Shown here: piece after piece, positions 24,547-64,000 of the stretch
How positions within the stretch are numbered: position 1 is the first letter of the stretch
Layout of the letters: every line of letters begins with the position of its first letter
Origin: Pecten maximus
Lineage: Eukaryota
Assembly (NCBI RefSeq): GCF_902652985.1
Contig: NC_047029.1
Span: 32,922,001-32,986,000 of the forward strand
Reading direction: 5' to 3'
Length of the DNA: 64,000 nucleotides
The notes under the pieces: generated by a model
Told to the model about the DNA's origin: nothing
Database searches by the model: none
Seen by the model: the letters and a program-made list of their open reading frames with translations, nothing else
Translations under genes and position numbers: made by a program

Positions 24547-26617
24547 ATGGCGGAGGCTCTTATAGACAATCAAACCTTCAAATGTCTGATATGTCTCCAG
24601 GAATGTAACATACCCCGACAGCTACCATGTTTTCACACGTTTTGCACGGGTTGTTTAAACACCTATATTAATTCCGAATACGTCACAGAAGATAACAGGA
24701 CGTACTTCCCCTGTCCGGTATGCGAAAGTCCGTGTTACCCTCACAACAAGGATGCTCCCGTTAGTTCTTGGGCCGGTTCGTTTCCTCGGAACCAGCTGTT
24801 CGCTTCATCAACGTATAACGAGACAGAATCAGGTCAGACATTCTGCCACGGATGTCTAACTGACGACGAAGAGAACGTTGCTTCCTTCTGGTGTAAAGCA
24901 TGCTCGGAAGCCTTGTGTCAGCCATGTCGCATTGCACACCGACGAAGCAAATTACTTTCAACACACAAAGTCATTGCCATAGCCGAGGTTTCTAAGACAG
25001 ATATACGCATGCCTGTATCCATTGACAACACGTGTCCTCGTCATACGGGGAAGAAGATCGAAGTATACTGCCACGACCACAACGCCTTATGCTGTGTTCT
25101 GTGCGTGACACTGTCACATAGAAGGTGTACGAATGTCAACAGCCTTGAAGATAATACAAAGATGTTCTCACTTGATGTCATCGAATGTGAGTTAGGCAAG
25201 ATGAAGGACGAGTCAAAAACAATTGTTGAAGAGGACGAAAACAAATTGACCACTCTCGAAGACGATTACCAGAAAATGACCAGAAATGTGGCCATGATGA
25301 TCAAGAGAGCGATAGGTAAGCTGGATGATCTCCTACCAACGTTTTCAAACCGGTTTAGATGTAACATACCGACGTCATCGAGAACGTCTACATGAACGCT
25401 TACGCACTAATAGAATATTTCAAGCAAACATTGAAAACACCAACCAACTGATGAGGGTGGTAAAAGGAAAAAGTCCTGTCGTTGATACATTTATTGTAAC
25501 GGAACAATCCAAGACACAACTTCTGAGACACGTCCGGCGTTTACAGCAGAGGACTGGAGACAAACACAATACATTTCAATTGAAGATGATATATGACGAC
25601 GTATTAGAGAAGGTCGTCAACGTGATGACAACTGTGGGAAGATTAGAAGTCTCATCTTCATTGTCATCGTCATCACATGACTCCCTCACATCTATTAGAC
25701 AAATCATTGACAAACTCCATGCCACATCGTCCATGACATCGTTTTCCGAATCAACGTCCTCCTCGGACATGTTGAGAGATGTAGGACACGTGGCAGTTCC
25801 ATCTTCGTCAATAGCGCCTCGTATTGACGTATGGACTGGGTCTTTATCTCTGGTTAAGTCTGTACATAAAGGTTCCATCGGTGGGTCAATGACTCCATGG
25901 CTGACAGGAGGGGTATTTATTGAAGGAGGTCTACTCGCTACAGACTATAATAATAAGAAACTATTACTATTTGATGATAGCTATGAGTATATAAGGCATT
26001 ATGATGTGGAGAACAGTCCTATTGATATCACACGTGGATTCGAACCGAATGAGTTACTAATTACCCATATCGATAGGTCTGTCAATAGCTGTATATTTCA
26101 GAATCGTGTCCGTACTGGTTCGACCTCTATCGGCAGGAAAGATTGTGTTGGAATGGTTTTGGGTATTGATACTCTGGGAGATAACATACTGATCGGGACT
26201 GATTATTCTGTCGAGATTTCAACATCTGATTTTAAACAGGTATCATCCATACCTAAACGCGGTTACAACATATACGTGGCCGCATCACCGGAAGGACTAT
26301 TTTACCACAGAGATGAATACGTCATCGTTTGTCGGTTACGTGACGGGAATGAAGAGTTCCGACATATGTGCAAAGGTATCAAAGAGCCACGAGGAACTGT
26401 TGTTGATCAGGATGGTAATGTATACGTGTGTGGAATGGAGTCGAGAGACATACACCTGATATCACATGACGGCTCCAAGGATCGAATCCTTCTCCCAAGA
26501 ATGTCTGGAATCACCCGACCGTACGCAATACTTCTCCATCCAACAAGACAGGAGATCATTGTGACGTCATGGCAGGAAAACGTGGTCTTTGAAGTATTCA
26601 AGTTTTGTGACCAGTGA
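24547..26617 (+). pseudogene. TRIM copy 2, single frameshift (real or consensus error)
   Basis: ORFs 24547-25395 and 25325-26617 join across a +1 frameshift at ~25332-25337 (GATCTCCTACCAACG vs GATCTTCACAAACG). AATAAA at 26682. Confidence 0.85.
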
Positions 26618-27826: not shown

Positions 27827-28529
27827 TGTAACCGGGTTGCCTAGACAGGATCCTTTGTAGTGAAAAACCAGAAGACAACCGGGTCGGGTTCGAGTTCTTT
27901 ATTGATGAATATGAGGAATTGATGAATCAACGAATTTATTGACCCTCGACTATGGGTTGAGGGTCACCAATATAATTTTACATATAGTGTACACAGGATC
28001 AATGGTTTTGATACATTTCAATTGTAGCTGGAAATATGAAAAGTTTCCTAGAATCAGGAAAACCTCCAGCTGTCACCACAGCTCCTTTAATTCTGGCTAA
28101 TACAAATATTTGACAAAGAACTTTCCCTCCAAAATATCTTAGCCAATAAAATTTAAGGTCAACTAAAAGGTCAGGTCAAGATAATACTGGACATTATATA
28201 CATATATCATGTGCACAGGACATGGACAGTGCACCACTGGACAACACAAAGATAGACTTATCACATGACTGTGCATACATACCACACGTACAGGTAAAAT
28301 CTATTTATAGCTTACAGACTCACAGGTAGTGTGAGTGAGCACTATATAGAGTATGTGTATACCTGCATGCAGAGTACCTACCAACTCTGCAACGCACACA
28401 GTAATATTGGATACATTAACTTGACCTGTAATAACAATACTTATAAAAATAGATAGCATTAAAACAAGCATATCATAGAATGTATAAAATCTTAATTGTA
28501 GCAATACTGAAATAGTTCACCTGGTCACA
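27827..28529 (-). repeat. Gypsy 3' LTR (703 bp)
   Basis: TGTAACC...GGTCACA, direct repeat of 34992-35698 with scattered substitutions and small indels. Adjacent PPT on minus strand (AAAAGGAGGGAG, ~28534-28545). Confidence 0.95.
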
Positions 28530-31500
28530 TACACTCCCTCCTTTTGGAAGACGTCCTCGTCTGCATCCTTTTTCATCCATACACGGTTTTCCCCCAATTA
28601 TGACGCTTAGTAACGCATCAGCTACCCTGTTTGATGCCGAGTCAAAAGTGCCTTCCTGTGCTAGGGACTTTATAAAATTGGCTCGGATCAACCAATCTGG
28701 CTCTGCTCTGGTACCTGCCATGACATATTCTCCAGTTCTCTGCCATGCAGGTGCCTGTCTGTGTTGACTGGACCTCCTGGTCTGAACTGCTTCCCTGAGC
28801 TCTATGGCAACCGGAACTTCCTCGTCCGTATCGCTGTCCGCGTGCGACGTTTCTGGTTGTCGTTTTCTTGGAGGGTTCCTTCTCGGCATTTTCCGTGGCA
28901 GTGGTTTGGGTGCTCTTGGTTCCTGTGATACCTGTGGGGGAAGTGAACCAATAGGGAGCAGGATGTTCCGGTGAAGTGTCTTGATCCGGCCTTCTCCATT
29001 ATCCTGCTGTACGTCATATACTGGAATGTCCTGGTTAGGTTGCTTGAGGACGATATAAACATTGTCTTCCCAGCGCTTTGCAATTTTATGCTTGCCGTCC
29101 CATGCTACCACTTTTACCAGGACTCGGTCTCCCTCCTGTATTACAGCACCTCTTGTTTTCCTGTCATAGTACTTCTTCTGTTTCTCTTGTGCTTTCTGGT
29201 TGTACTCAGAGGCTATCCTGTATGCTTCCTTCAATCTTGCACGTAGTTCCCTTCCATAGCCTGATAAGGTGTTGGATTGCTGCTTAGTATCCACCCCAAA
29301 AACCAGGTCAATCGGCAGTCGTGGTTCCCTCCCAAACATCAAAAAGAATGGGGATTGGTTCGTTGTTTCATGGCGGGTACAATTGTAGGAATGTACCATA
29401 TGTCCAACAAACTTCTTCCAATCGGCCTTCTCTATATTGGTCAGGGTTCGAAGCATGTCGAAAAGTGTCCTGTTAAATCTCTCGCACTGGCCATTACCCA
29501 TCGGGTGGTATGGGGTGGTTCTGGATTTGGTGATCCCAGTTAATTGGCAAAGTTCATGGATGAGCTTTCCTTCAAAGTTAGCACCTTGGTCACTATGTAT
29601 GCGTTTAGGCATCCCATAGTGCATGATGAAGTGATTAAATATGACGTCAGCTGTCGTCTTAGCTGTCATGTTTCTAGTTGGGATGGCCTGTGCATACTTG
29701 GTAAAATGGTCTGTAATGACCAAGATGTGTTGGAATCCTCCCTTAGATGTTTCAAGAGTAGTGAAGTCCACACATACCAACTCGAGTGGCTGGCTGGTCT
29801 TAATGTTCACAAGTGGGGCTACCTGCTTAGTATGGGCTTTTCTCGTAAGGCACCGACTACACCTGTTGCCAGATTCTTCTATGTCCAGGTACATGTTTGG
29901 CCAATAGAATCGGTCTCTCACTAATGAGATGGTCTGGTCACGAGCAGGATGTCCTATTTCATCATGAAGTCCTTGCAATACCTCTAGCTTCAATGCCTTA
30001 GGTATAACCAGTCTATAGGAAGGTCCTCCATCTCCTATTACCTCCTTATAGAGCATTCCCTCTCTAAGCTTCAGTTTCCCTCAGGCCTTATAGAGTGCGG
30101 CTTCTGTCCTAGGAACATCTTTCCACTTGGGCTTCACCCCTTTTCGAACATGCTCAATCCATGTGCCTAAAACAGGGTCCTCCAACTGTGTGGTCTTCAG
30201 TTCCGAGGCTGTCATCTTAGAGAAACTCAGACCTGGCGTATCCGCATCCTCAGCAGACTCTGGTAATGTGTGTGCCAAACACAAACTCTCCACATAGGGG
30301 TAATGACGTATAGCTTCACAGACTGCTCTCACTGCATCCGTCGATATGGTTTCCGGTAGCCTTGATAGCCCATCTACATCTGCATTGCTAGACCCTGGTC
30401 GGTATACAATGCTGAAATTGTAGTTTGCTAGGGCCGCTATCCATCTATGTCCTGTGGCATCGAGTTTTGCTGAGGGTAAGACATAGGTGAGAGGATTGTT
30501 GTCGGTCATTACTGTGACTGTGAAAGTTTGTCCATACAAGTAGTCGTGGAACTTTTCGCTGATTGCCCATTTAAGGGCGAGGAATTCCAGTGTGTGGGCT
30601 GGGTAGTTCCTCTCTGACTTACTCAAGCCTCTACTGGCATAGGCTATGACCCTCTTCCTCCCCTCCTGCTCTTGATAAAGCACAGCACTAGTGATGCATC
30701 TGTGTGGACCTCGAAGGGTTTCTGGAAGTTGGGATAGCCAAGGATTGGTGGGGACACTAAGGCTTTCTTGAGTGCTGTGAATGCATTCTCCTGCTCCACT
30801 TCCCATCTCCATTCCTTTACCGCTCCTACTTGCTTGGACTTCCCTTTCGGTGTCTTCCTAGGTGTAGGCATGAGGTCGGTAAGAGGTCTGGCAACTTTAG
30901 AGAAATCCTTTATGAATTTTCTATAATACCCAATGAAACCAAGGAACTGCCTCACTTCTTCTGGGGAGGTTGGGCGTGGCCATGACTTCACCTTCTCCAC
31001 TTTTTCTGGGTCTGGTTCAACTGCGTCTGCGGAGACTATGTGGCCTACGTATTTGATCTTCTGCATGAAAAAGGCGCACTTACTGGGCGAAAGCTTGAGG
31101 CTAGACTCACGTAGTCGCTGTAGAACTTTCTCCATCCTCTCTAAATGTTCCTCATAGGTGTCCGAAAAGAATATGAGATCATCAAGATAGATAAAACAAT
31201 ATTTGAGGTGAAGGTCTCCTAAACACTCTTCCATGAGCCGCTGGTATGTCTATTGAACTCGTAGAAACCAAGTGCTCCAACGGTAAAAGCTGTTCTGGCC
31301 TTGTGTTGCTCATCTATCTCCAACTGGTGATATCCTGACTTCATGTCCAGCACGGTGAAATACTTATTTCCAGCTAAGGAGTCCAGGATATCGTCAATCC
31401 TTGGGACAGCATATGCATCCTTGATTGTTCGCTGGTTAAGCTGCCTGTAATCCACACACATGAGGAGTTTTCCATCTTTCTTTCTGCATAAGACAACATT

Positions 31501-32600
31501 GGAGGTCCAAGGAGAGTGCGACTTGCGGATAATCCCTGCAGCAAGTAACTGTTGGAGATGGCTCCTGACCTCATCAATCATCGAGGGTGGTATCCTTCGG
31601 TGTCGTTGCCTGAAAGGTATACCATCTGTTGCCTCAATCCGATGCTTGACGAGACGGGAATGCCCAATATCAAGATCGTCCTTTGAGAAGATGTCATCAA
31701 ACTTACAGATGAGTTCTCTCCCCTTCAGCAGCTGCTCGGCCGTCAAGTCTTCTGTACTGATACTTACCGGTATATCATTAAGTTCTCCCAAATCCTTGTA
31801 TTCCTCAGAGGTGGCCCTGATCGTCTCCACTGTAACTGGCTGGAGCTCACAAAGGAGTGCTTTTGACGATATGGTCACTGTCCGAGTACTAACATTGGAG
31901 ATCTGAACTGGTATAAATCCGGTGGCATCCTGGTTGTATGGTATCAATGTGGGTGTAATGTCCAGGTCCTCCATAACTACTGCATTTGGTGTTGGTTGTA
32001 GGATTGCACAAACAGGTAAATATGGCAGCTTCTTATCCATGTATGCCTGTATGGTCATTGTAATGTTAGGCATGACAGTGATCCGTTTGGCCTCTGCTGA
32101 CCTCACTAGCGCTAGTCGGTTGTCATTCCACTCCAGTTGCCTATCCCTTAGTAGGATACAACGGAATACCAAGTACCATGGGGTCCTCAGACTGGCTGTC
32201 TGTAAAAATCTCCTTCCAAGATGTTCCTGTAAATCATCCATGATAGCATTTAAAACGTTAGTATCTAGCAGTATAGGTACCGACGAGTTGTACCTACTAT
32301 CCGGCACTACTAGAAATAAACAATGGTAATTGCTTTCCTTACCTGCGAGTAACGGGGTAATGCTAGCTTCTATGTACCCGAGGTACGGCAATGCTTCTCC
32401 ATCTGTGCATTCCACATGTAGAACCATTCTCCAATGGTGTTATGGGCATATCCTTAAAATACATATTATAAAAAAAACTGTGGCTCAATGTCGATACGGC
32501 AGATCCTGTGTCCAAAAGGGCTCTCGTCTCTGTCCCTTCTACAACCAATGTTACCTCGTTCGGGTGTCCAATTAGGCCCCCAGTATCGCTGTGGCCTCTA
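28473..32600 (-). pseudogene. Gypsy pol (protease, dUTPase-like spacer, RT, RNase H, integrase) split by frameshifts
   Basis: LLDTGS protease; LDMKSGYHQ and YLDD RT; HTDAS / LEFLALKWA / TDNNPL RNase H; HDEIGH..C..C and VCVDF / HSDQG / CERFNRTL integrase. Confidence 0.95.
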
Positions 32601-51590: not shown

Positions 51591-53279
51591 TAGAACAACC
51601 TATATAACACGTTATGCTGTTCTATGCTTTGATAGTTTTGATGTGTTCTTACAGTTTCCAAATTATGCAAATTATCTAATCTTTGAAAGAGGATTAAAAT
51701 ACCGTTGTTGAAGAGCAATGTACATAACAGATGCAGTATAAGGTATTCCATTCAAGAATTCACTATTCGATATCCAGGACAAGTCACGGGGCTCAAGCAT
51801 TTACCAAAGTAACTTTTTCTCGGCGTGCAGACATAAATAGTTGGACACACTATGTGAAGTAATTTTTGAAAAATAGGGAAAAAATGGGTGATAGATACCT
51901 CTCATTTTATTTCGCCACAAAACTTCCCTCAGCTGCACAATTTTACATAAACATAAAGTTAAATATTCCGCTAAATTATTAAGATTTTGAATGGTGCATA
52001 GCTCGACATATGACAATTAACATTTAGAATTATTCAGATTTATAATAAACAATCAGAACATGAATTTTGAGTAGCTCGTTTTGCGACATTCAACATCCAG
52101 AATCATTCAAAATTTAAATGTTGTGAATCTCGCCTCTTTTTGAGCATCGTAATAAGTATGAGACACATTATCTTACTCCTCTATGCCAGTAACACCAGTC
52201 GATTCACCCGCGTTGATGACTAAAAAAAATAGAACTACACAGCACAAAATGCAAATAAAATAATACTTGGAAGGGGTTTATTCGGATAGCATTGATACTG
52301 TAAAACACATCACACATACTGTTGTGCTTCCGTCAATTCGAACGACACGTGCTTGTATAACGGATATCAAGGTAGGCGCTTGTCATATTTTGAAATTTCC
52401 TTTCTTGTAACTGGCAATGTATGGCAAAATCGTACAGCTTATATCTTTTTCAAAATAATTAAATGTTGTAAAATCTTCCATTGTCTTCCTTTTGTGCTTC
52501 AGTTATTACAAAACGTAATAAATCGTACCTTTCGCCGCCGTAACTAAGTAGACATTCATTGAGTGTCGTGTAACATACGTGGGATAAATACCTCTAATGG
52601 TCTAGGACTAGGCTCTGATAACTCGACTACTCCATGTTCCTCGAACTATTGAGTTGGTTACCTTTTCAGAAAGTTTCTTAAGTTAAGAATTTTAAACATG
52701 TACGAAATTTTGTAAGTGATGGAGCTTGAAGGGAACCCGTGGTACATAACATTTCGAATTAGCGGACATTGTAGGTCACAGTGACCTTGTTTAGCACCTG
52801 GTTTATTTTGATATCAAATACTTGATGTACATTCAATTAATTAACCCTCTAACTGTATACATTGGCCGTTGTTTAATTATATTTACTATTTAAAAACTGC
52901 TCGCCTCTTCAAAAAGTAATATGTGTTTCCTCTGTCTCTCTGGCTATATAGCTATACTTAATCAGCGTCTAATGCATATGTAAGTGATAAGGTATAATAC
53001 ATTCACGTGATGTTAAAATGTTTCGTTTATAAAGTATGAACAACAATTGTATTAATTAAGATCAACAGTTGTAAAAGCATTTGATATTTATTTATAACAT
53101 CAGGTTGAACATATTCTAAATAAATAATAGCAGAAAATCCAATTGAATTTTGTTGATGACAGGTTGAGCTTCAGGATATTAACTTTTGGATGTCAGTATT
53201 TTGTGTGGGTTCCAAAAGAAATAAAAATATATTTCATCGATTTTGTTGGTATATTAAGACAGTTACGCCAAAATCATGA

Positions 53280-53497
53280 TTAAGCTGTACAAAGGGGTGT
53301 CAATATCAGGTTACACGGAGCGACGCACTGCGCAGGGTTTGCAATCAGCCGACATCTCACACATTCCGGAATGTTTTGTGGACTTGCCAAATTTTCCTGG
53401 GTACAAATCGCTGTTACCAGGTCGATAGCTCCTTTGTTTTCGTTGTTACTCTTTCCCTGTTCGACTCCCTTACGATAAAAGTAGAAGTTAATCAATC
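53280..53497 (-). CDS. Duplicate (distal) copy of the terminal coding exon of the secreted Cys-rich protein gene
   Basis: Identical to 57747-57964, including acceptor and downstream AATAAA (53087-53092). Confidence 0.65.
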
Positions 53498-53584
53498 CTG
53501 AAATGATAATATCAGTTCAAATTGGCGCAAAGTATGAAAAGTATGTGATCATATTAATCATTAACACGTTTTAAGTAAGTAACT

Positions 53585-53790
53585 GTTAACTATATCATTT
53601 GAATATGTATACTAAAGTATCTAAATGTCTTAACTATATCATATATATGTGCTTACTACATTATCTCAAGGTGTTAACTAAATTATCTAAATGTGTTAAC
53701 TATATTATTTGAAAGTGTTAACTATATTATTTCAATTGGTTAACTACATTATTTGAATATTTTACCTACATTGTTTAAATATGTTTAAAA
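53585..53790. repeat. Degenerate ~22-bp AT-rich minisatellite (GTTAACTATATTATTTGAAAGT-like); duplicate at ~58052-58257
   Basis: Several imperfect tandem units. Confidence 0.65.
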
Positions 53791-53850
53791 TGATAACTTA
53801 TTCATATCCTGTGATAAAGTGTATATTTTGCGTCCACGAACGTGATCGCT

Positions 53851-54935
53851 CGCGCATGTGGGTTAATGTTGCATTTATAATTAAAAAGAACAAAAAACGT
53901 CATGTTTTAACATAAATTCAATATTTAATGATTTCCCGGTTAGTTCTGTTTGTTTTCTTGATCGGATTTTAATGTTAGGTGTCCAACGTCTTTATCGGGA
54001 TGTTTTCGTCGTTCCTCGTGTTCTCGCGTGGTCACGTGACCGGCACGAAGGACTACATTAACACTTGGTCGGTAAATATGGCCAGAGCACCCGACCAACG
54101 TATTTTGTCGTACAAACAAATATGATACACTTATTCATCGTGCTAAGAAACCGAGAAAAAGTGCTGTACATTCTATTTATTCAAGTATGGTTACATAACG
54201 GCGTTATAAACTGGTGTTAATTGAAGAAGTGCCGATTAATTGACTACTTTTTAAGTAATTTTGACGATGTTTGTCATTTTCGTAAGAATGTACAGCACTT
54301 TTCGTTGTTCTCATACAATTACCTTCACGCTCTTACCTGTTTCATAAGTATTGATTTAGGGTAGTCGGGTGCTCTAGGACGATTCTCCAATATTGGAACT
54401 CTTCAGTGTTTTAAGTATCGAAATCGGCATATAGAAACGAACAAACGTTAATAAACGAATGCAATGGATCGTAATTAATTCAATTAATTATTTACAGATG
54501 ATTTCCAAAGACATAAGGTATAGTTAGAAGTTTTCGGCTGTACACATGCAAGTTTGTAAATTCGTCAGTGATGAAACCACCGTCCTCGTCGTTGCCATGA
54601 CAGCCGATCGAAGCTGCGATCACGAATGCACTGACAAAGTGAAAGTTGAAGTATTTTTCGCAACATGCGGTTTAAACTTAAAATTACATTCCCACCTCAT
54701 ATTGATTGGGGTTGTTTAATTATACCTGATCAATTGAATTATCAGAAAACTAACAAAAACACTAAAAAAACACAGAATGAAGCCTTCGTGTCAGGCAGTG
54801 CAGACACAACGCGGGATCTGTAAACAATATGACGTCATTGGAATGTACAAGTTGCAACCATGTACAACAATGTATATTTTACATGAATACACTAATGAGC
54901 AACAAAACGGGACGCAACATTAACCCACATGCGCG
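53851..54935. mobile_element. Fold-back type non-autonomous element with nested inverted repeats; duplicate at 58318-59402; true ends uncertain
   Basis: Perfect 22-bp inverted repeat CGCGCATGTGGGTTAATGTTGC (53851-53872 / 54914-54935); inner pairs AGAGCACCCGAC/GTCGGGTGCTCT and AAAAGTGCTGTACATTCT/AGAATGTACAGCACTTTT. Confidence 0.6.
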
Positions 54936-55896
54936 CTTTTTCACTAGCATTTTAAGAAACTTGTTCGCATTAGGTAGTTTGCGCCTTCATTGTGGCATCA
55001 TCGTTCGCTGAAAATATTACATAAAACCTATTCACAAAGGTTAATAAGATACTTTTCATAAGTAACAACAGAGTATACAATGAACAATTAACTCTGTCAT
55101 ACAGTTATTTTAGCCTATTCCACTTTTTTTTGTTTCTTTCTTGTTGTTTTTTTGTATTTTTTACGATACACATATTTTATTCACCCAACATTTCGTTCTG
55201 GTGAAAAAGGTGTGGATTTAAAGGGAAGCTACCCAACCTGTCTTAACCTACGACGTTATATGCGTCATAACTAATATTTACTGCCGCGAACGGCATCAAT
55301 ATTTACATGTTCATCATTTTCGTTCTCTTCGAACAGTGAAGTGGTGTGAACTATTCATAAGGATCAAATACAGATAATTGATACGAAATTAAAATAAGTT
55401 TCTACTAACATCTTATTTGTTTCAAATTATTCATCCGATTGTTAACGTGACGAAATAATTTTCCCTCACATGTAATGGGAAACGTAATAAAAGTTTTACA
55501 GAATATCACTTTCTGTGTGTGCTTCTATGACTTAAAATATAACTTGAACTTCTATTACATATTTGGTTTGGGTTTTGAATTTCGACAGCTATGGTCATTG
55601 ACTTGTATGTGAGGGATACATGCGTGTAGTAACTGTTTGTGTGTTTGGCGGAGACTACAGTATGTCCGTGCGTGTCTCTTTGTGATAGCAGGGAATTAAT
55701 CTCTGATTTAATTTTTGATCTCAAAATATATTATTGTTAACATAACAAGTATAATGCAAATAGGTAAAACATAGAAAATATAAGTTATGTATTGACTAAA
55801 GGGATTATACAACAGACTAAGACTATACAAGACTTTTCCTATAAGTTCCTATAGAATCGATTCCGGATTTATAGTGTTACCTGATTGAAATACACT

Positions 55897-56057
55897 GCCG
55901 AGGACATGTTGGAGACTCCATGGCTAACAGGAGGGACATTTATTAAAGGCGACAGTCTTCTTACAGACTTTAACAACAAAAGACCGTTCGATGATAACTA
56001 TGATTATATCAGACAGTATGATGTAGAAAGTGTCGCTATTGATATTACATGTAGAAC
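55897..56057 (+). pseudogene. Duplicate of the TRIM propeller relic
   Basis: Identical to 51430-51590. Confidence 0.85.
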
Positions 56058-57746
56058 TAGAACAACCTATATAACACGTTATGCTGTTCTATGCTTTGAT
56101 AGTTTTGATGTGTTCTTACAGTTTCCAAATTATGCAAATTATCTAATCTTTGAAAGAGGATTAAAATACCGTTGTTGAAGAGCAATGTACATAACAGATG
56201 CAGTATAAGGTATTCCATTCAAGAATTCACTATTCGATATCCAGGACAAGTCACGGGGCTCAAGCATTTACCAAAGTAACTTTTTCTCGGCGTGCAGACA
56301 TAAATAGTTGGACACACTATGTGAAGTAATTTTTGAAAAATAGGGAAAAAATGGGTGATAGATACCTCTCATTTTATTTCGCCACAAAACTTCCCTCAGC
56401 TGCACAATTTTACATAAACATAAAGTTAAATATTCCGCTAAATTATTAAGATTTTGAATGGTGCATAGCTCGACATATGACAATTAACATTTAGAATTAT
56501 TCAGATTTATAATAAACAATCAGAACATGAATTTTGAGTAGCTCGTTTTGCGACATTCAACATCCAGAATCATTCAAAATTTAAATGTTGTGAATCTCGC
56601 CTCTTTTTGAGCATCGTAATAAGTATGAGACACATTATCTTACTCCTCTATGCCAGTAACACCAGTCGATTCACCCGCGTTGATGACTAAAAAAAATAGA
56701 ACTACACAGCACAAAATGCAAATAAAATAATACTTGGAAGGGGTTTATTCGGATAGCATTGATACTGTAAAACACATCACACATACTGTTGTGCTTCCGT
56801 CAATTCGAACGACACGTGCTTGTATAACGGATATCAAGGTAGGCGCTTGTCATATTTTGAAATTTCCTTTCTTGTAACTGGCAATGTATGGCAAAATCGT
56901 ACAGCTTATATCTTTTTCAAAATAATTAAATGTTGTAAAATCTTCCATTGTCTTCCTTTTGTGCTTCAGTTATTACAAAACGTAATAAATCGTACCTTTC
57001 GCCGCCGTAACTAAGTAGACATTCATTGAGTGTCGTGTAACATACGTGGGATAAATACCTCTAATGGTCTAGGACTAGGCTCTGATAACTCGACTACTCC
57101 ATGTTCCTCGAACTATTGAGTTGGTTACCTTTTCAGAAAGTTTCTTAAGTTAAGAATTTTAAACATGTACGAAATTTTGTAAGTGATGGAGCTTGAAGGG
57201 AACCCGTGGTACATAACATTTCGAATTAGCGGACATTGTAGGTCACAGTGACCTTGTTTAGCACCTGGTTTATTTTGATATCAAATACTTGATGTACATT
57301 CAATTAATTAACCCTCTAACTGTATACATTGGCCGTTGTTTAATTATATTTACTATTTAAAAACTGCTCGCCTCTTCAAAAAGTAATATGTGTTTCCTCT
57401 GTCTCTCTGGCTATATAGCTATACTTAATCAGCGTCTAATGCATATGTAAGTGATAAGGTATAATACATTCACGTGATGTTAAAATGTTTCGTTTATAAA
57501 GTATGAACAACAATTGTATTAATTAAGATCAACAGTTGTAAAAGCATTTGATATTTATTTATAACATCAGGTTGAACATATTCTAAATAAATAATAGCAG
57601 AAAATCCAATTGAATTTTGTTGATGACAGGTTGAGCTTCAGGATATTAACTTTTGGATGTCAGTATTTTGTGTGGGTTCCAAAAGAAATAAAAATATATT
57701 TCATCGATTTTGTTGGTATATTAAGACAGTTACGCCAAAATCATGA

Positions 57747-57964
57747 TTAAGCTGTACAAAGGGGTGTCAATATCAGGTTACACGGAGCGACGCACTGCGC
57801 AGGGTTTGCAATCAGCCGACATCTCACACATTCCGGAATGTTTTGTGGACTTGCCAAATTTTCCTGGGTACAAATCGCTGTTACCAGGTCGATAGCTCCT
57901 TTGTTTTCGTTGTTACTCTTTCCCTGTTCGACTCCCTTACGATAAAAGTAGAAGTTAATCAATC
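57747..57964 (-). CDS. Terminal coding exon of a small secreted Cys-rich protein
   Basis: Acceptor ATTTCAG|GA, phase 1; encodes (G)LINFYFYRKGVEQGKSNNENKGAIDLVTAICTQENLASPQNIPECVRCRLIANPAQCVAPCNLILTPLCTA*; AATAAA on minus strand at 57554-57559. Confidence 0.75.
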
Positions 57965-60038
57965 CTGAAATGATAATATCAGTTCAAATTGGCGCAAAGT
58001 ATGAAAAGTATGTGATCATATTAATCATTAACACGTTTTAAGTAAGTAACTGTTAACTATATCATTTGAATATGTATACTAAAGTATCTAAATGTCTTAA
58101 CTATATCATATATATGTGCTTACTACATTATCTCAAGGTGTTAACTAAATTATCTAAATGTGTTAACTATATTATTTGAAAGTGTTAACTATATTATTTC
58201 AATTGGTTAACTACATTATTTGAATAGTTTACCTACATTGTTTAAATATGTTAAAAATGATAACTTATTCATATCCTGTGATAAAGCGTATATTTTGCGT
58301 CCACGAACATGATCGCTCGCGCATGTGGGTTAATGTTGCATTTATAATTAAAAAGAACAAAAAACGTCATGTTTTAACATAAATTCAATATTTAATGATT
58401 TCCCGGTTAGTTCTGTTTGTTTTCTTGATCGGATTTTAATGTTAGGTGTCCAACGTCTTTATCGGGATGTTTTCGTCGTTCCTCGTGTTCTCGCGTGGTC
58501 ACGTGACCGGCACGAAGGACTACATTAACACTTGGTCGGTAAATATGGCCAGAGCACCCGACCAACGTATTTTGTCGTACAAACAAATATGATACACTTA
58601 TTCATCGTGCTAAGAAACCGAGAAAAAGTGCTGTACATTCTATTTATTCAAGTATGGTTACATAACGGCGTTATAAACTGGTGTTAATTGAAGAAGTGCC
58701 GATTAATTGACTACTTTTTAAGTAATTTTGACGATGTTTGTCATTTTCGTAAGAATGTACAGCACTTTTCGTTGTTCTCATACAATTACCTTCACGCTCT
58801 TACCTGTTTCATAAGTATTGATTTAGGGTAGTCGGGTGCTCTAGGACGATTCTCCAATATTGGAACTCTTCAGTGTTTTAAGTATCGAAATCGGCATATA
58901 GAAACGAACAAACGTTAATAAACGAATGCAATGGATCGTAATTAATTCAATTAATTATTTACAGATGATTTCCAAAGACATAAGGTATAGTTAGAAGTTT
59001 TCGGCTGTACACATGCAAGTTTGTAAATTCGTCAGTGATGAAACCACCGTCCTCGTCGTTGCCATGACAGCCGATCGAAGCTGCGATCACGAATGCACTG
59101 ACAAAGTGAAAGTTGAAGTATTTTTCGCAACATGCGGTTTAAACTTAAAATTACATTCCCACCTCATATTGATTGGGGTTGTTTAATTATACCTGATCAA
59201 TTGAATTATCAGAAAACTAACAAAAACACTAAAAAAACACAGAATGAAGCCTTCGTGTCAGGCAGTGCAGACACAACGCGGGATCTGTAAACAATATGAC
59301 GTCATTGGAATGTACAAGTTGCAACCATGTACAACAATGTATATTTTACATGAATACACTAATGAGCAACAAAACGGGACGCAACATTAACCCACATGCG
59401 CGCTTTTTCACTAGCATTTTAAGAAACTTGTTCGCATTAGGTAGTTTGCGCCTTCATTGTGGCATCATCGTTCGCTGAAAATATTACATAAAACCTATTC
59501 ACAAAGGTTAATAAGATACTTTTCATAAGTAACAACAGAGTATACAATGAACAATTAACTCTGTTATACAGTTATTTTAGCCTATTCCACTTTTTTTGTT
59601 TCTTTCTTGATTTTTTTGTGTGTGTATTTTACCATACACATATTTTATTCACCCAACATTTCGTTCTGGTGAAAAAGGTGTGGATTTAAAGGGAAGCTAC
59701 CCAACCTGTCTTAACCTACGACGTTATATGCGTCATAACTAATATTTACTGCCGCGAACGGCATCAATATTTACATGTTCATCATTTTCGTTCTCTTCGA
59801 ACAGTGAAGTGGTGTGAAACTATTCATAAGGATCAAAATAAGTATATAGCTATGTGTTAAGTGTACAACATACAGGAAAACAAAAACATGTACAATAACC
59901 TAACTACAAAAACCTGTAAGATGATAAATGCATATAAGATACTCTAAGAATTATATGAAATAATATTCGCAGACACAAGCCCCTTTCATTACATTTGAAT
60001 GAGATTTAGATAGAGTAGAGCTTAAAACTAAATCAAGC

Positions 60039-60230
60039 TACATCATGCAGCTGTTCCGTCCTTCTAGGACTCGTCAGTGATGTAAGAGACATCATACAGC
60101 TGTTTCTTCCTCCTAGGACTCGTTAGTGATGTTAGAGAATTATATAGTTGCTCCGTCCTTCTAGCACTCGTCAGTGATGTAGGAGACACCATACAGCTGT
60201 TTTGTCATTCTAGGACTTGTTAATTATGTA
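60039..60230 (-). ncRNA. Tandem array (4 x ~49 bp) of degenerate minimal type I hammerhead ribozyme motifs
   Basis: Minus-strand consensus TACATCA-CTGACGA-GTCCT-AGA-AGGAC-GAAA-CAGCT-GTA-TGATGT: stem I, CUGANGA core, stem II hairpin, GAAA, palindromic stem III (ACAGCUGU) and a GUA cleavage triplet. Confidence 0.75.
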
Positions 60231-60462
60231 TATAATAACCTCATAGTACAATAAATTTAATAATTTTCAATACCTTTACTCTGAACTATTCAAATGAATA
60301 AAATCTTGAAATACAGGTTAAACTAAACACAGGAATTGAAAGATGAAAAAAAAACCTAATATATCAAAGATAATCAAAACATAAATATCATGACATTATC
60401 TAAACAAAAATAGAGGTTGTAAGATAATCTACAAGACTAAATTCATTGTATGAGGTCTTTAC

Positions 60463-60571
60463 CACATCCAAGGAGGGCGCCGTCATCGATATCTGCCACC
60501 ACTGGCCGTAGCTGGACAATGGTCAGTGCTAGTATCACGGACAGGTGATACAACAGCTGTAGACGTCGCAT
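60463..60571 (-). CDS. First coding exon (signal peptide) of the small secreted Cys-rich protein
   Basis: Acceptor TTCTTTTGGTGTTGCAG| at 60579/60578, ATG at 60571, MRRLQLLYHLSVILALTIVQLRPVVA-DIDDGALLGC, phase-1 donor G|GTAAAG at 60463/60462, which matches the phase of the terminal exon. Confidence 0.78.
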
Positions 60572-62125
60572 CACGATACTGCAACACCAAAAGAAATTAA
60601 ATACAAAACAAATAAAATAAAACAGTGCATTATTATTGTAAATCGATAGTATTGGTCCATGGTCATAAGGCAAAACACACTGTGAACTCGTTTGTGAAAT
60701 ATACTTGATACAGGGAGACCTAAACCAAAATAACCATAACTTTGTATGAATCTGCCCGTCGCCGTGGCGTCTAATGCAATAGTTTATTTGTAAATTATAG
60801 TTGGACAGCGATTCTAAAAAATTAACAACCGATGGAAACATTTAAAGGTGACATGGTGCTCTCTATTACCAAGGAGTTTCAGGTGAAGGTCAGAGGAGCA
60901 GACCCTTTTGTGATCGTCGTTACGGGTACAGAAAGAGAAGGATCAGGTAATAAGGGGGTAAATGTCTATAATATATAAGAATCTCTAAAACAAGATCAAA
61001 TTGTTCAGAACAAAGCATGCATAAAAGTAGTAACATATATAAGTAATAAAGTCTGTAACTGAACACGAGAACAATAAAATAACGTTTGACGCATGGGGAC
61101 ACTCTTCTGCGTTGAATTTCAACATCATTTTCTTCGTTCGTCGAATTTTCAATGCAAACCAATCATAAAGTTTTGATTGGATTGCAAGAGAGTTTTGTAA
61201 TGTGAGTTATTTTATTTTGTAAATAAACATAATATATTAATTCGCATGCTTTCCTGCCTAATTATTATGCAATATTTCCCTCGTTTGTGAACGAATATTC
61301 GTTTGAATCATGTACTGTTTCATAGCGTTACAAGTGTAACATATCATCACTACTACAGCGAATAGATTAAGCGTCCAAGGATATCTAACTCTGATGAGTT
61401 AACACATTGATAAGTGTCAAACCAGATACTTCCTTGGTGGTGTCACAGGATAACTGGATCTCCAACGAGGTCAAATTATGTTCGCAAAACACACACATGT
61501 ATATACCAGGTATATGGTGATGTGTATATTAGAAGTGGATTCAGGATTTTGCCAGGGGTGTGTTTACCTTTGCCTAGGCATGTACGGGTATATAAATTCT
61601 GTTTCGATAAAGGGGGACAATTTAGTTTATATCCCCACCTTCCACCCACAGGATTCGCCACTGTCGATACCCGACTACTGCCAAACCAGACACGATTTTT
61701 GCATGCATCAAAATAGTTCAATTCTTTCATTACTGAAATATATTTCTGTAAAAAATATTTAGAAAAATAATTTATATCGCAATATCCATGTAGTTAAATG
61801 TGCATTGTTTCAGTTGTTCTATAACGTAAGTACATCTATATCAGTGAGTACTACAGTTTGTATACATTTAAACGAAATGTTATCAATAAATATGAATGTC
61901 AATATGAAGGCCACTCCAATATTCAACCCGACCATCCCGTACTGTTTATGTGCTTGAGTATCTCAAAACAATGTTATTTAAACAGAAATAACATTTAATT
62001 GAACTTAAATTAGAAACCAAATGAATATGGATATGATAAGGACAGCTTAATACAATTCATGTTTACTTTCAACCCTTGGTAACCCTTTCCAAATATTACT
62101 CAAAATTTCATCTCGTTAGTGTCCC

Positions 62126-62159
62126 CAGAGACTTATATACTAATTAATATAGGTCTCTG
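62126..62159. mobile_element. Second copy of the CAGAGAC...GTCTCTG mini-palindromic element
   Basis: CAGAGACTTATATACTAATTAATATAGGTCTCTG; flanks GTGTCCC / GTCTCCC (6 of 7 match). Confidence 0.65.
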
Positions 62160-62503
62160 GTCTCCCAAACTGAATATTGAGAAAATGTATTTCTATGTTT
62201 GGTTGTGTAATAAATAGACATTAATATATATATTAAAACATATAAACTTAGAACTCTGAGGTCAAGAGGACAAAATGATCATATCTAATAACGTTGCATG
62301 CATAGACATTTATAATAATTATCACACTAAAACCAACACCTGATGCTATCTAATGAAAACACTAGCCATAAATCTACAATGTAGAATATTACTCGATATG
62401 TCCTAAAACAGCGTTTATATATGATAAACCATCGTACTGACTATAGTTTTACAGTAATTGACCGATGGCTGTAAGCTTTGACACGGGTCATCAGATAACT
62501 TAC

Positions 62504-62580
62504 CTAAGCTGGTTATCAGGATTCCAACGGCAACCACAGGTGAGGAAACGGTGCTCTCCTTAACGGAGGGAGTTCAGTGG
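62504..62580 (-). other. Probable non-coding first exon of the secreted-protein gene (start approximate)
   Basis: GC-richer patch ending in a consensus donor TAG|GTAAGT at 62504/62503, upstream of the acceptor at 60579. Confidence 0.45.
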
Positions 62581-64000
62581 ATCAGCCGTTCTAAAAGGTT
62601 TGCATATGACATACCCCCCTTTCCATGTCAGTTAACACTGGCAGATGATTTATGGCGTGAATATGTTTAAATCCTGAGATCCAACACACACGGTAATTTA
62701 TTTCCCGGGTTGAAATGCGTAATTCTTTTTTTTTAAACGGGCTACACCTACATTTGATAAATGAGTTAAATGAAAACTGACATTGTTGTTGTTCGTTAAT
62801 GTAGCAATAATGTTAATTTTTATCTAAGTATGCATAAAATATTCAGGGAAAGGATAAGATCATTTTGTTCAGTTGTTTCGCTGATACTAACATTTATTTT
62901 GATGATAACATCATTTTTGTTATGATTGAACATTTGTTTTGCTTATATCAACATTTTGCCTAAATACGAACACATGTTTTGGTAATATCAACACTTGGTT
63001 AGATGAAATAAAGTACTAAAGTCCTATTTTTTTCTGAAATAAACACTATAGTTTTGCCGAAATATACACGTATATAAATACTTGTGTTGTGATATAACAC
63101 CTGTGTTCTAAGCATTCGGTGTTGTTCCTATTGTCTGTGATGCCCATGTTTAACTGATAGCAACACGTTTCAACACGTGCTTTGAACTATTGACCAACAT
63201 CAGCACCAACACCGATGCAAGCCTAAGTAAGATTTGTAAATAGTTTCATTGATTTCATTAAATACTGTAAATGTATAATTATATTTTAGGGGTAGTATTA
63301 TTTTAGCGCTGTGTTGAGAGCTTTCCCTACTGATTAAAACTTGAGTGGACTGAAATAGGTAGATATGCTGTAACAACTCCCATTTATTGAAAGATTTGAT
63401 GGAGTTTATATTTGAATCGTTTTCATGGATTAATTTTTTATCACTAAAAGATATAAAACGACTTACGAAATATAAATCTAGTAAAGGAATGACATTATGT
63501 GCCCGCCATGAAATAGACGAGAATAAAATATCCAAGCGTGATGTATTGTTCTGGAATGGTTACGTTTGTTTAAGGAAAACAAACGGTATAAAAGCAGTCC
63601 ATAACTTTATGCTGGATTCCCCTCTTTTATTTTTTATAAAAAAAAAACCTTTTTTATTCAGATAAAACATATTTCCAACATTACAAGCATTGTTCTCTCG
63701 CAGAAGTTCTTTCGCCATTCATCTATCTCCACATTCATTTCACTTTCATGCATCATAGTTTTATATTCCGTATATAACATTGATATTATTATTGTTTTCA
63801 TCATATTCAACTACGATGGTATTTATTTCAATTTTCGTCACTCTCATTCGTTTTCTTTCATCTGAAAGAATGAATTTGAATTAAAGAGAAAGAAAACGGT
63901 ATGCTAGTTCATAATAAACAGAAAAACAATGAAAACATGACAATGCATTTTTCTTCGCTGCACTGATCGAGTCAGCAGTACAGTACGACATTGTAATTAT

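What the first reader, a model, noticed from the sequence alone, without database searches (positions are those of the whole stretch)
57747..62580. Hidden spliced gene for a 108-aa secreted Cys-rich protein, convergent with the TRIM cluster
Two ORF-track fragments 2.5 kb apart splice in phase (G|GTAAAG ... TTTCAG|GA) to give MRRLQLLYHLSVILALTIVQLRPVVA^DIDDGALLGCGLINFYFYRKGVEQGKSNNENKGAIDLVTAICTQENLASPQNIPECVRCRLIANPAQCVAPCNLILTPLCTA. Seen directly: splice sites, phase match, basic-hydrophobic-VxA signal peptide, poly(A) signal. The 82-aa mature part has 7 Cys with CxxC and CxxxC spacing. I do not recognise it as a mytilin, myticin, defensin, big defensin or macin. The odd Cys count suggests a disulfide-linked dimer or a missed micro-exon. 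A defence or signalling role is inference only.
Basis: partly seen in the sequence, partly recalled or inferred. Interest (0 to 1): 0.8.

Follow-up and report, generated by a model that had tools for sequence, protein, structure and literature searches.

The report
Scallop-only small secreted cysteine-rich protein gene

Summary
Observation confirmed. Assembled transcripts from four public king-scallop (Pecten maximus) studies join 62504>60578 and 60463>57964 on the minus strand, with GT..AG introns and nothing between the exons. This rules out a missed micro-exon.

- **Transcript:** at least 636 nt, running from 62597 or beyond down to about 57539, with AATAAA at 57559-57554.
- **Relatives:** the Yesso scallop has a 108-aa ortholog (OWF40488.1, 72-73% identical) with the same seven mature cysteines. 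I also found a diverged paralog about 15 kb away on the opposite strand, annotated as LOC117343648 (129 aa, nine cysteines). It has the same phase-1 intron one base after the first cysteine.
- **Family size:** nothing else turned up in the genome or among 1.84 billion protein representatives. Pfam and NCBIfam gave no hit.
- **Weak similarities:** hits to phosphoglycerate kinase and to the EGFR cysteine-rich domain disappear when a family profile or the paralog is used. UniRef's "Kazal-like" name is not supported.
- **Function:** the mature proteins are acidic (pI 4.2-4.8), which argues against a classical cationic antimicrobial peptide. The odd cysteine count is conserved, which fits a covalent dimer or a partner-linked protein.
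- **Duplication:** the last exon lies in a 4.46-kb near-identical tandem duplication, so a second identical terminal exon exists.

The scan has already recorded several other scallop-only secreted gene families on other DNA of this genome, so this is a moderate-interest orphan family.

The parts
62504..62597 (-). Exon 1, non-coding 5' UTR. The 5' end lies at least at 62597. It contains no ATG. The donor is CTTAG|GTAAGT.
   Evidence: Sequence. The RNA contig X6 record 23 covers 62504-62597 and is joined to 60578.
60579..62503 (-). Intron 1 (1925 nt, GT..AG).
   Evidence: The joint 60578>62504 appears in 4 runs of 4 studies.
60463..60578 (-). Exon 2. The ATG is at 60571-60569. It encodes 36 codons, MRRLQLLYHLSVILALTIVQLRPVVA followed by DIDDGALLGC: the signal peptide plus the first 10 mature residues, ending at Cys1. 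It also carries the first base of the split Gly codon.
   Evidence: Translation, hydrophobicity, RNA contigs. The exon is single-copy in the genome.
57965..60462 (-). Intron 2 (2498 nt, phase 1, GT..AG). It holds a hammerhead-like array, a dispersed expressed repeat and a 22-bp tandem array.
   Evidence: The joint 57963>60462 appears in 4 runs. See also the Rfam hit and the repeats.
57539..57964 (-). Exon 3. It encodes 71 further residues with Cys2 to Cys7, coding down to 57750. The stop TAA is at 57749-57747, followed by about 210 nt of 3' UTR.
   Evidence: Translation. RNA contigs reach 57539-57588.
57554..57559 (-). AATAAA poly(A) signal, about 15 nt before the furthest transcript contig end.
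   Evidence: Alignment and sequence; contig ends.
53072..53497 (-). Second copy of exon 3, identical at every base and including the acceptor and poly(A) signal. It may be an alternative terminal exon, a dead duplicate or an assembly artefact.
50916..59837 (.). Tandem duplication: 50916-55368 matches 55383-59837 (4.46 kb, 99.7%). The stretches 50916-53759 and 55383-58226 are 100% identical. It carries exon 3, most of intron 2 and the region just downstream of the TRIM ORF's stop codon.
   Evidence: Self-BLAST; list of differences.

Best explanation
This is an expressed protein-coding gene of the king scallop, and it belongs to a small family not yet described and known only from scallops. The gene has a non-coding first exon. 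The second exon encodes a cleavable signal peptide and the first ten mature residues, up to the first cysteine. A phase-1 intron falls one base after that cysteine codon. The last exon encodes the rest of the protein. The product is an 82-residue, mildly acidic secreted protein with the cysteine framework C-x31-C-x13-C-x2-C-x8-C-x3-C-x7-C and a conserved motif G-V/I-x-x-G-x-x-x-N-E-N-x-G-A.

Shown: the splicing, the expression, the conservation of length and of all seven cysteines in the Yesso scallop, and a neighbouring paralog with the same architecture plus one extra cysteine pair.

Inferred: the protein enters the secretory pathway and forms three internal disulfides. The seventh cysteine is conserved and left over, so it most likely makes an intermolecular disulfide, either a homodimer or a link to a partner or matrix. 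The protein then acts outside the cell by binding something, as a signalling ligand, carrier or matrix or mucus component. It probably does not work as a membrane-disrupting cationic antimicrobial peptide.
For: - **Splicing and expression:** spliced contigs occur in 4 runs of 4 studies, with exact GT..AG joints and no extra exon.
- **N-terminus:** a signal-peptide-like start is conserved in three proteins.
- **Ortholog:** P0001 has 108 aa, is 72-73% identical with no indels, and has identical cysteine spacing.
- **Paralog:** P0002 (LOC117343648) gives BLASTP E 3e-06 in a single comparison and has the same x31 spacing between Cys1 and Cys2 and the same C-x2-C-x8-C core. It has the same phase-1 intron, one base after Cys1, and lies about 15 kb away.
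- **Odd cysteine count:** kept at 7, 7 and 9.
- **Charge:** acidic, with pI 4.77 and 4.16.
- **Allele comparison:** the coding part of exon 3 differs from the C3905 allele at 3 of 213 bases (1 non-synonymous). The wider match differs at about 4.4%.
Against: - No protein-level evidence (mass spectrometry) is available.
- No signal-peptide predictor was available, so secretion rests on sequence inspection and hydrophobicity only.
- AlphaFold models are of low confidence (pLDDT 48-49), so neither the fold nor the disulfide pairing is known.
- The tissue of expression is unknown because run metadata are coded.
- A free thiol, rather than a dimer, would explain the odd cysteine equally well.
- Only two species and three proteins define the family.
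Confidence: 0.6

Rival explanations
1. It is a host-defence (antimicrobial) peptide. It would be secreted on challenge and would kill microbes directly.
For: It is small, secreted and cysteine-rich. It sits beside an expanded TRIM cluster. Transcripts are present in runs labelled metatranscriptomic.
Against: The mature proteins are acidic (net charge -2 and -7, pI 4.77 and 4.16), whereas classical bivalve antimicrobial peptides are cationic (own knowledge). There is no Pfam hit to any defensin, macin or similar family. The sequence is not hypervariable: the ortholog is 72-73% identical with no indels, and there is only one non-synonymous difference between alleles.
Confidence: 0.12
2. It is a Kazal-type serine protease inhibitor, as UniRef's automatic name for the Yesso scallop ortholog implies.
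For: The UniRef name is 'Kazal-like domain-containing protein'. There are six cysteines in the C-terminal two thirds.
Against: Neither Kazal_1 nor Kazal_2 of Pfam hits, even at E up to 10, in the ortholog, the paralog or the window's exon pieces. The cysteine spacing x13, x2, x8, x3, x7 does not fit the Kazal spacing of roughly x7, x10, x2, x17 (own knowledge). The ortholog's mature part has no tyrosine at all, so the conserved Kazal Tyr is missing.
Confidence: 0.03
3. The C-terminal half is a single furin-like or growth-factor-receptor type cysteine-rich module (as in EGFR domain IV). The protein would then be a stripped-down derivative of such a repeat.
For: phmmer aligns exon 3 to EGFR residues 203-251, sharing C..P....CV.CR.......CV..CNL, at E 0.19. 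The EGFR stretch shown there has spacing C-x4-C-x7-C-x2-C-x8-C-x3-C. The paralog has C-x6-C-x7-C-x2-C-x8-C-x5-C, so its extra cysteine falls where EGFR has one.
Against: E 0.19 is not significant. The hit disappears with the family profile and with the paralog. Pfam Furin-like and GF_recep_IV do not hit. Cysteine-rich sequences often give such chance matches.
Confidence: 0.1
4. It is a prohormone. It would be cut at the dibasic Arg-Lys after FYFY into an 18-residue N-peptide carrying one cysteine and a six-cysteine C-peptide, which would also explain the odd cysteine count.
For: The RK pair is conserved in P. maximus and in the Yesso scallop. A cut there would split the cysteines 1 + 6.
Against: The paralog has K-I at that position, so the site is not a family feature. 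RK is a rarely used convertase site (own knowledge). The sequence was not found in the held supplementary files of the Yesso scallop neuropeptide survey. Pfam's crustacean neurohormone family does not hit.
Confidence: 0.08
5. The N-terminal half of the mature protein descends from a fragment of a bacterial-type phosphoglycerate kinase (the GGG-I-A-N-T-F ... G-K-S region).
For: The ortholog P0001 aligns to E. coli PGK residues 205-259 at E 0.012. Other PGK chains match the same region.
Against: The match is lost with the paralog, with the P. maximus exon 3 piece and with the family profile. Pfam PGK does not hit. The genome-wide PF00162 search finds only the true PGK gene on C6 and nothing at this locus. 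The scallop's own PGK reads IIGGGMAFTF and has no intron at the matching place.
Confidence: 0.03
6. The transcript is non-coding and the 108-codon frame is a chance ORF.
For: There is no proteomic evidence. The protein is apparently missing from the annotated P. maximus protein set.
Against: The frame, the length and all cysteines are conserved in another scallop genus. A paralog with the same intron phase is annotated as coding. The ATG has a purine at -3 and no upstream ATG in exon 1.
Confidence: 0.04

Closest known systems
Hypothetical protein KP79_PYT19030 (OWF40488.1, UniRef A0A210PVH0) of Mizuhopecten yessoensis
   Same: It has 108 aa and 72-73% identity over exon 3 and 64% over exon 2. 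There are no indels, the seven mature cysteines are identical and the signal peptide is of the same type. It is the ortholog.
   Different: It comes from another genus. It has one extra cysteine inside the signal peptide. It is uncharacterized, and its automatic 'Kazal-like' name is not backed by Pfam or by the cysteine spacing.
Uncharacterized protein LOC117343648 of Pecten maximus (P0002, 129 aa)
   Same: It is a neighbouring paralog. It shares the exon plan, the phase-1 intron one base after Cys1, the x31 spacing to Cys2, the NEN-x-GA motif and the C-V-x-C-x-L-I-x-N-x-A-x-C core.
   Different: It is only 33% identical. It has a longer N-terminus with a DDDDD run, two extra cysteines (nine in total) and a pI of 4.16. 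It lies on the opposite strand, outside the window.
Furin-like / EGFR domain IV cysteine-rich module
   Same: Local spacing C-x7-C-x2-C-x8-C-x3-C and a few shared residues (CV.CR, CV..CNL).
   Different: The match is not significant (E 0.19). There is no Pfam hit, and the match is lost with the profile and with the paralog. The scallop proteins are single small secreted units with an additional N-terminal part and an odd cysteine count.
Taxonomically restricted secreted cysteine-rich peptides of bivalves (defensins, big defensins, mytilins, myticins, macins)
   Same: A small precursor with a signal peptide, a disulfide-rich mature part, a lineage-restricted distribution and local gene duplication.
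   Different: There is no sequence or cysteine-framework match. The proteins are acidic rather than cationic, and they are not hypervariable.

Membership tests
Scallop 7-Cys secreted protein family (unnamed; this gene, OWF40488.1, LOC117343648) | N-terminal signal peptide followed by a short acidic stretch ending in Cys1 | tested here: met
   No dedicated signal-peptide predictor was available.
Scallop 7-Cys secreted protein family (unnamed; this gene, OWF40488.1, LOC117343648) | Phase-1 intron one base after the Cys1 codon, with the ATG a few bases into the second exon | tested here: met
   Window: TGT G|GTAAAG ... CAG|GA. Paralog: TGC C|GTAAGT ... AAG|TA, and its annotated protein reads ...GWC-L-ISPG....
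Scallop 7-Cys secreted protein family (unnamed; this gene, OWF40488.1, LOC117343648) | Framework C-x31-C-x13/14-C-x2-C-x8-C-x3/5-C-x6/7-C and the motif N-E-N-x-G-A | tested here: met
Kazal-type inhibitor domain (Pfam PF00050 / PF07648) | Profile match to the Kazal domain | tested here: not met
   No Pfam family hits at E up to 10 for the exon pieces, P0001 or P0002.
Kazal-type inhibitor domain (Pfam PF00050 / PF07648) | Six cysteines spaced about x7, x10, x2, x17 with a conserved Tyr (own knowledge) | tested here: not met
   The spacing is x13, x2, x8, x3, x7. There is no Tyr in the mature ortholog.
Furin-like / growth-factor-receptor cysteine-rich repeat (PF00757, PF14843) | Profile match | tested here: not met
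   No Pfam hit. The PDB hit to EGFR is only E 0.19 and is absent with the profile and with the paralog.
Furin-like / growth-factor-receptor cysteine-rich repeat (PF00757, PF14843) | Cysteine spacing of a two-disulfide module | tested here: inconclusive
   The C-x7-C-x2-C-x8-C-x3/5-C core is similar to the EGFR stretch shown. The disulfide connectivity is unknown.
Phosphoglycerate kinase (PF00162) | Profile match and extended similarity beyond one motif | tested here: not met
   No Pfam hit. There is no PF00162 signal at this locus. The PDB hit of E 0.012 comes from the ortholog only and is lost.
Cationic cysteine-rich antimicrobial peptides of bivalves (defensin, big defensin, mytilin, myticin, macin) | Family profile or cysteine framework, and a net positive charge | tested here: not met
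   No Pfam hit. The net charge is -2 and -7.
Cationic cysteine-rich antimicrobial peptides of bivalves (defensin, big defensin, mytilin, myticin, macin) | Antimicrobial activity, and induction on challenge | not testable with these tools
   This needs bench work and labelled RNA-seq.
CHH / ITP neurohormone family (PF01147) | Profile match; six cysteines spaced about x15-16, x2, x12, x3, x8 (own knowledge) | tested here: not met
   No Pfam hit. The spacing x13, x2, x8, x3, x7 is only loosely similar, and the paralog deviates further.

The most novel reading that the evidence does not exclude
The two scallop genes define a new fold family of covalently dimerising (or partner-linked) secreted ligands unique to Pectinidae. 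The conserved odd cysteine would be the functional cross-link, for example in a scallop-specific signalling or pheromone-like factor or a calcium- or matrix-binding protein.
Probability: 0.2. Interest if true: 0.5.

Novelty: new variant of a known kind. Interest (0 to 1): 0.33.

Why it matters
It adds a real, expressed and apparently unannotated gene to the king scallop genome. It also links three proteins that have no characterized function or supported family (one unannotated, one "hypothetical", one "uncharacterized") into a single scallop-restricted family with a defined cysteine framework and a shared exon plan. It shows that the automatic "Kazal-like" label on the Yesso scallop protein is unreliable.

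Such lineage-restricted secreted proteins are where bivalves keep much of their species-specific extracellular biology, including immunity, shell, mucus and signalling. Many such families exist in this genome, however, and no function can yet be assigned, so the value is modest until the tissue and the partner are known.

Tried and rejected
- **Family scans:** Pfam and NCBIfam scans of both exon pieces, the ortholog and the paralog found nothing.
- **Word-index protein searches (three):** these returned only the ortholog and the paralog.
- **Exhaustive HMMER search:** 1.84 billion representatives, queried with the ortholog, returned only the query itself.
- **ESM Atlas:** no usable feature hit, and the Atlas models have pLDDT 0.39-0.45.
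- **PDB sequence searches:** PGK at E 0.012 and EGFR at E 0.19 were followed up and rejected. Both vanish with the family profile and with the paralog.
- **AlphaFold2:** one run on the single sequence and one on a 4-row alignment gave pLDDT 49 and 48. I ran no fold search, because such models give meaningless matches.
- **More paralogs:** profile and protein searches of the genome gave only chance-level hits elsewhere.
- **Unplaced scaffold C3905:** it is an allelic copy (95.6% identical) that breaks off at a 500-N gap inside intron 2. It cannot show whether the tandem duplication is real. I left the gap untouched.
- **Literature:** accession numbers, locus tags and peptide motifs gave no paper. 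The held supplements of a scallop neuropeptide survey and of a bivalve biomineralization paper do not contain the sequence. No supplement of the shell-proteome paper was held. A cadmium-binding protein paper was irrelevant.
- **Joined sequence:** Searches used the two exon pieces separately and the natural full-length ortholog. For that reason I also could not check by exact look-up whether the joined protein is annotated.


Full report
**Where we are.** The window is G000:C15:32922001-32986000 of a 918.3-Mb assembly in 3983 contigs. A protein encoded 15 kb beyond the window is held in public databases as "uncharacterized protein LOC117343648 [Pecten maximus]", on a contig of 38,817,130 bases. 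That is the length of C15. The genome is therefore the king scallop.

Reading the minus strand gives three exons:
- Exon 1 ends CTTAG|GTAAGT at 62504.
- Exon 2 begins GTTGCAG|TATCGTGATG at 60578, with the ATG at 60571, and ends GGATGTG|GTAAAG at 60463.
- Exon 3 begins CATTTCAG|GATTG at 57964. The stop TAA is at 57749-57747.

The split codon G|GA keeps the frame.

**RNA evidence.** I laid Logan contigs from four public runs of four different studies on 57200-62700. One run is on record as RNA-Seq; the kind of the other three is a guess.
- Each run has one contig of 427-558 nt carrying the joint 57963>60462, which skips 2498 nt.
- Each also carries the joint 60578>62504, which skips 1925 nt.
- Both joints read CT..AC on the plus strand, which is GT..AG on the gene's strand.
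- In X6 the record coordinates run 2-340, 341-457 and 458-551 without any inserted letters. There is therefore no micro-exon.

Exon 2 occurs once in the whole assembly. Exon 3 occurs only with its intron flanks. The joined form is therefore RNA-derived and not a retrocopy.

It reaches at least 62597 at the 5' end and 57539 at the 3' end. The AATAAA signal is at 57559-57554. Exon 1 has no ATG, and the start codon has a G at -3.

A self-comparison shows that 50916-55368 and 55383-59837 form a 4.46-kb tandem duplication, 99.7% identical.
- It contains exon 3, most of intron 2 and a few hundred bases of the neighbouring TRIM gene's downstream region.
- The two copies of exon 3 (57964-57539 and 53497-53072) are identical at every base, including acceptor and poly(A) signal.
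- All 15 differences between the copies fall in a 22-bp tandem array and a low-complexity patch. The stretches 50916-53759 and 55383-58226 are 100% identical.

RNA contigs cannot tell which copy is spliced. I also cannot tell whether the duplication is very recent or an assembly artefact.

The unplaced scaffold C3905 carries an allelic version that is 95.6% identical. It ends in a 500-N gap inside intron 2, which I left alone. That allele differs in the coding part of exon 3 at three bases: one non-synonymous (Asn to Asp, the residue the Yesso scallop also has) and two synonymous.

- **Ortholog.** The exon 3 piece finds one protein among 5.8 billion clusters. It is OWF40488.1 of Mizuhopecten yessoensis, 108 aa, 72% identical. 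Its length is the same, there are no indels, and all seven cysteines of the mature part are in place.
- **Paralog.** A weak genome hit (E 2.6) lay only 14 kb past the window's end, which is far too close to be chance in 918 Mb. Reading that region gives an upstream exon with an ATG four bases after an acceptor. It encodes a signal peptide and an acidic stretch ending ...NIGWC, with the donor TGC C|GTAAGT. A last exon follows, AAG|TA ATA AGT..., and AATAAA comes 9 nt after the stop codon.
- **Shared architecture.** In both genes the intron falls one base after the first cysteine codon, in phase 1. Cys1 and Cys2 are 31 residues apart in both. Both share Y-[RK]-x-G-V-x-x-G-x3-N-E-N-x-G-A and C-V-x-C-x-L-I-x-N-x-A-x-C. 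Pairwise BLASTP gives E 3e-06.
- **Annotation agrees.** The database then returned exactly this protein as LOC117343648, 129 aa, with the junction ...GWC-L-ISPG... that I had predicted. It has nine cysteines, which are the family's seven plus two.
- **No further members.** Searches of the genome with a profile and with the paralog found no further member.
- **Apparently unannotated.** The main gene's own protein was not returned from the protein collection, although its neighbour's was. It therefore seems to be unannotated in P. maximus. I could not check this by exact look-up, because the joined sequence was not to be submitted.

**Is it a known family?**
- **Profile libraries.** Pfam and NCBIfam give nothing for any piece or relative, even at E up to 10.
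- **Exhaustive search.** An HMMER search of 1.84 billion representatives with the ortholog returns only itself.
- **ESM Atlas.** It has no feature neighbours.
- **Weak PDB hit to PGK.** The ortholog aligns to E. coli phosphoglycerate kinase 205-259 at E 0.012. This hit is absent with the P. maximus exon 3 piece, with the paralog and with a family profile. The PGK family model finds only the true PGK gene on C6, whose motif and intron positions differ.
- **Weak PDB hit to EGFR.** The P. maximus exon 3 piece aligns to EGFR domain IV at E 0.19. This hit is also absent with the paralog and the family profile. The local cysteine spacing does resemble one growth-factor-receptor module, and the paralog's extra cysteine falls where EGFR has one. 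I keep that as a resemblance only.
- **"Kazal-like" label.** UniRef's name for the ortholog fails both tests that I could run: there is no Pfam Kazal hit, and the spacing is wrong with no conserved Tyr.
- **Structure prediction.** AlphaFold2 gave helical models of low confidence (pLDDT 49 and 48). I therefore did not run fold searches.

**How it probably works.**
- **Shown:** the gene is transcribed and spliced. It encodes a precursor whose first 26 residues have a basic start, a hydrophobic core (12-residue Kyte-Doolittle mean 2.3-3.5 in the three proteins) and small residues at -3 and -1.
- **Inferred:** the signal peptide is cleaved, the protein is secreted and disulfides form.
- **Charge:** the mature proteins are acidic. 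The ortholog has pI 4.77 and net charge -2. The paralog has pI 4.16 and net charge -7, with a DDDDD run. The window's own pieces sum to -2. That argues against a classical cationic, membrane-active antimicrobial peptide.
- **Odd cysteine count:** the count is conserved at 7, 7 and 9. No exon is missing, so one cysteine is left over in every member. The simplest reading is an intermolecular disulfide (a homodimer, or a link to a partner or matrix). A free thiol is the alternative.
- **RK pair:** the conserved RK after FYFY would split the cysteines 1 + 6 if it were cleaved. The paralog has KI there, so I rate a prohormone mechanism as unlikely.
- **Open questions:** tissue and partner are unknown. 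Literature and supplement searches gave nothing.

**Context and verdict.** The gene lies tail-to-tail with the last intact TRIM-type gene of a cluster. That gene has RING, B-box and a weak NHL/SGL-like match, with a 687-aa ORF at 48631-50694. This confirms "convergent with the TRIM cluster", but nothing links the two functionally.

Other reports of this scan describe several further scallop-only secreted gene families on other DNA of the same genome. The kind is therefore common here.

The finding is real, cleanly confirmed and extended: ortholog, paralog, shared exon plan, duplicated terminal exon. It remains an orphan secreted protein family of unknown function, so I score interest as moderate to low.

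**Limits.** There was only one reads call and one large search. Run metadata were coded.

Noticed in passing
window 60039-60230 (minus strand, inside intron 2): Array of hammerhead-like units. Rfam Hammerhead_3 hits at 60048-60102 on the minus strand (39.5 bits, E 4e-06, below the gathering score). RNA contigs pile up here at very high depth (up to about 8960 in X2). They show many 'goes back 44-51' joints, as expected for tandem or circular RNAs of a dispersed retrozyme-like repeat.
   Followed up: partly
window 58320-59400 (and its duplicate about 53853-54933): An intronic stretch is covered in all four runs by deep contigs that differ from the window at many bases and by a 25-nt insertion, and that run on into unrelated sequence at both ends. 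It is a dispersed, transcribed repeat of unknown type, not part of the gene's mRNA.
   Followed up: no
window 58007-58297 and 53540-53830: Tandem array of 22-bp units just upstream of each copy of exon 3. The allelic scaffold C3905 breaks into a 500-N gap right after this array.
   Followed up: partly
L015:1661-3936 (G000:C15:32997661-32999936, plus strand; about 15 kb beyond the gene, outside the window): Diverged paralog LOC117343648 (129 aa, nine cysteines, DDDDD run), arranged head-to-head with the gene in the window.
   Followed up: yes
window 19352-21420, 24547-26617, 43918-44724, 48631-50694 (plus strand): Cluster of TRIM-type genes (RING, B-box, weak NHL/SGL-like C-terminus) in segmentally duplicated blocks that are 83-97% identical. 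Only the last (687-aa ORF) looks intact as a single frame.
   Followed up: partly
window 28473-32427 (minus strand) and 39767-40975 (plus strand): Retrotransposon ORFs (integrase with H2C2 and rve domains; reverse transcriptase) lie between the TRIM copies.
   Followed up: no
G000:C3905:63502-70344: An unplaced 100-kb scaffold carries an allelic copy of the TRIM 3' part plus exon 3 (about 91-96% identical). It is probably a haplotig. After its gap the sequence is unrelated to this locus.
   Followed up: partly
P0001 residues 26-81: The Yesso scallop ortholog shows a curious local likeness to the GGG-IANTF...GKS region of bacterial phosphoglycerate kinase (E 0.012 against the PDB). I judge it a chance match after the paralog and the profile failed to reproduce it.
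   Followed up: yes
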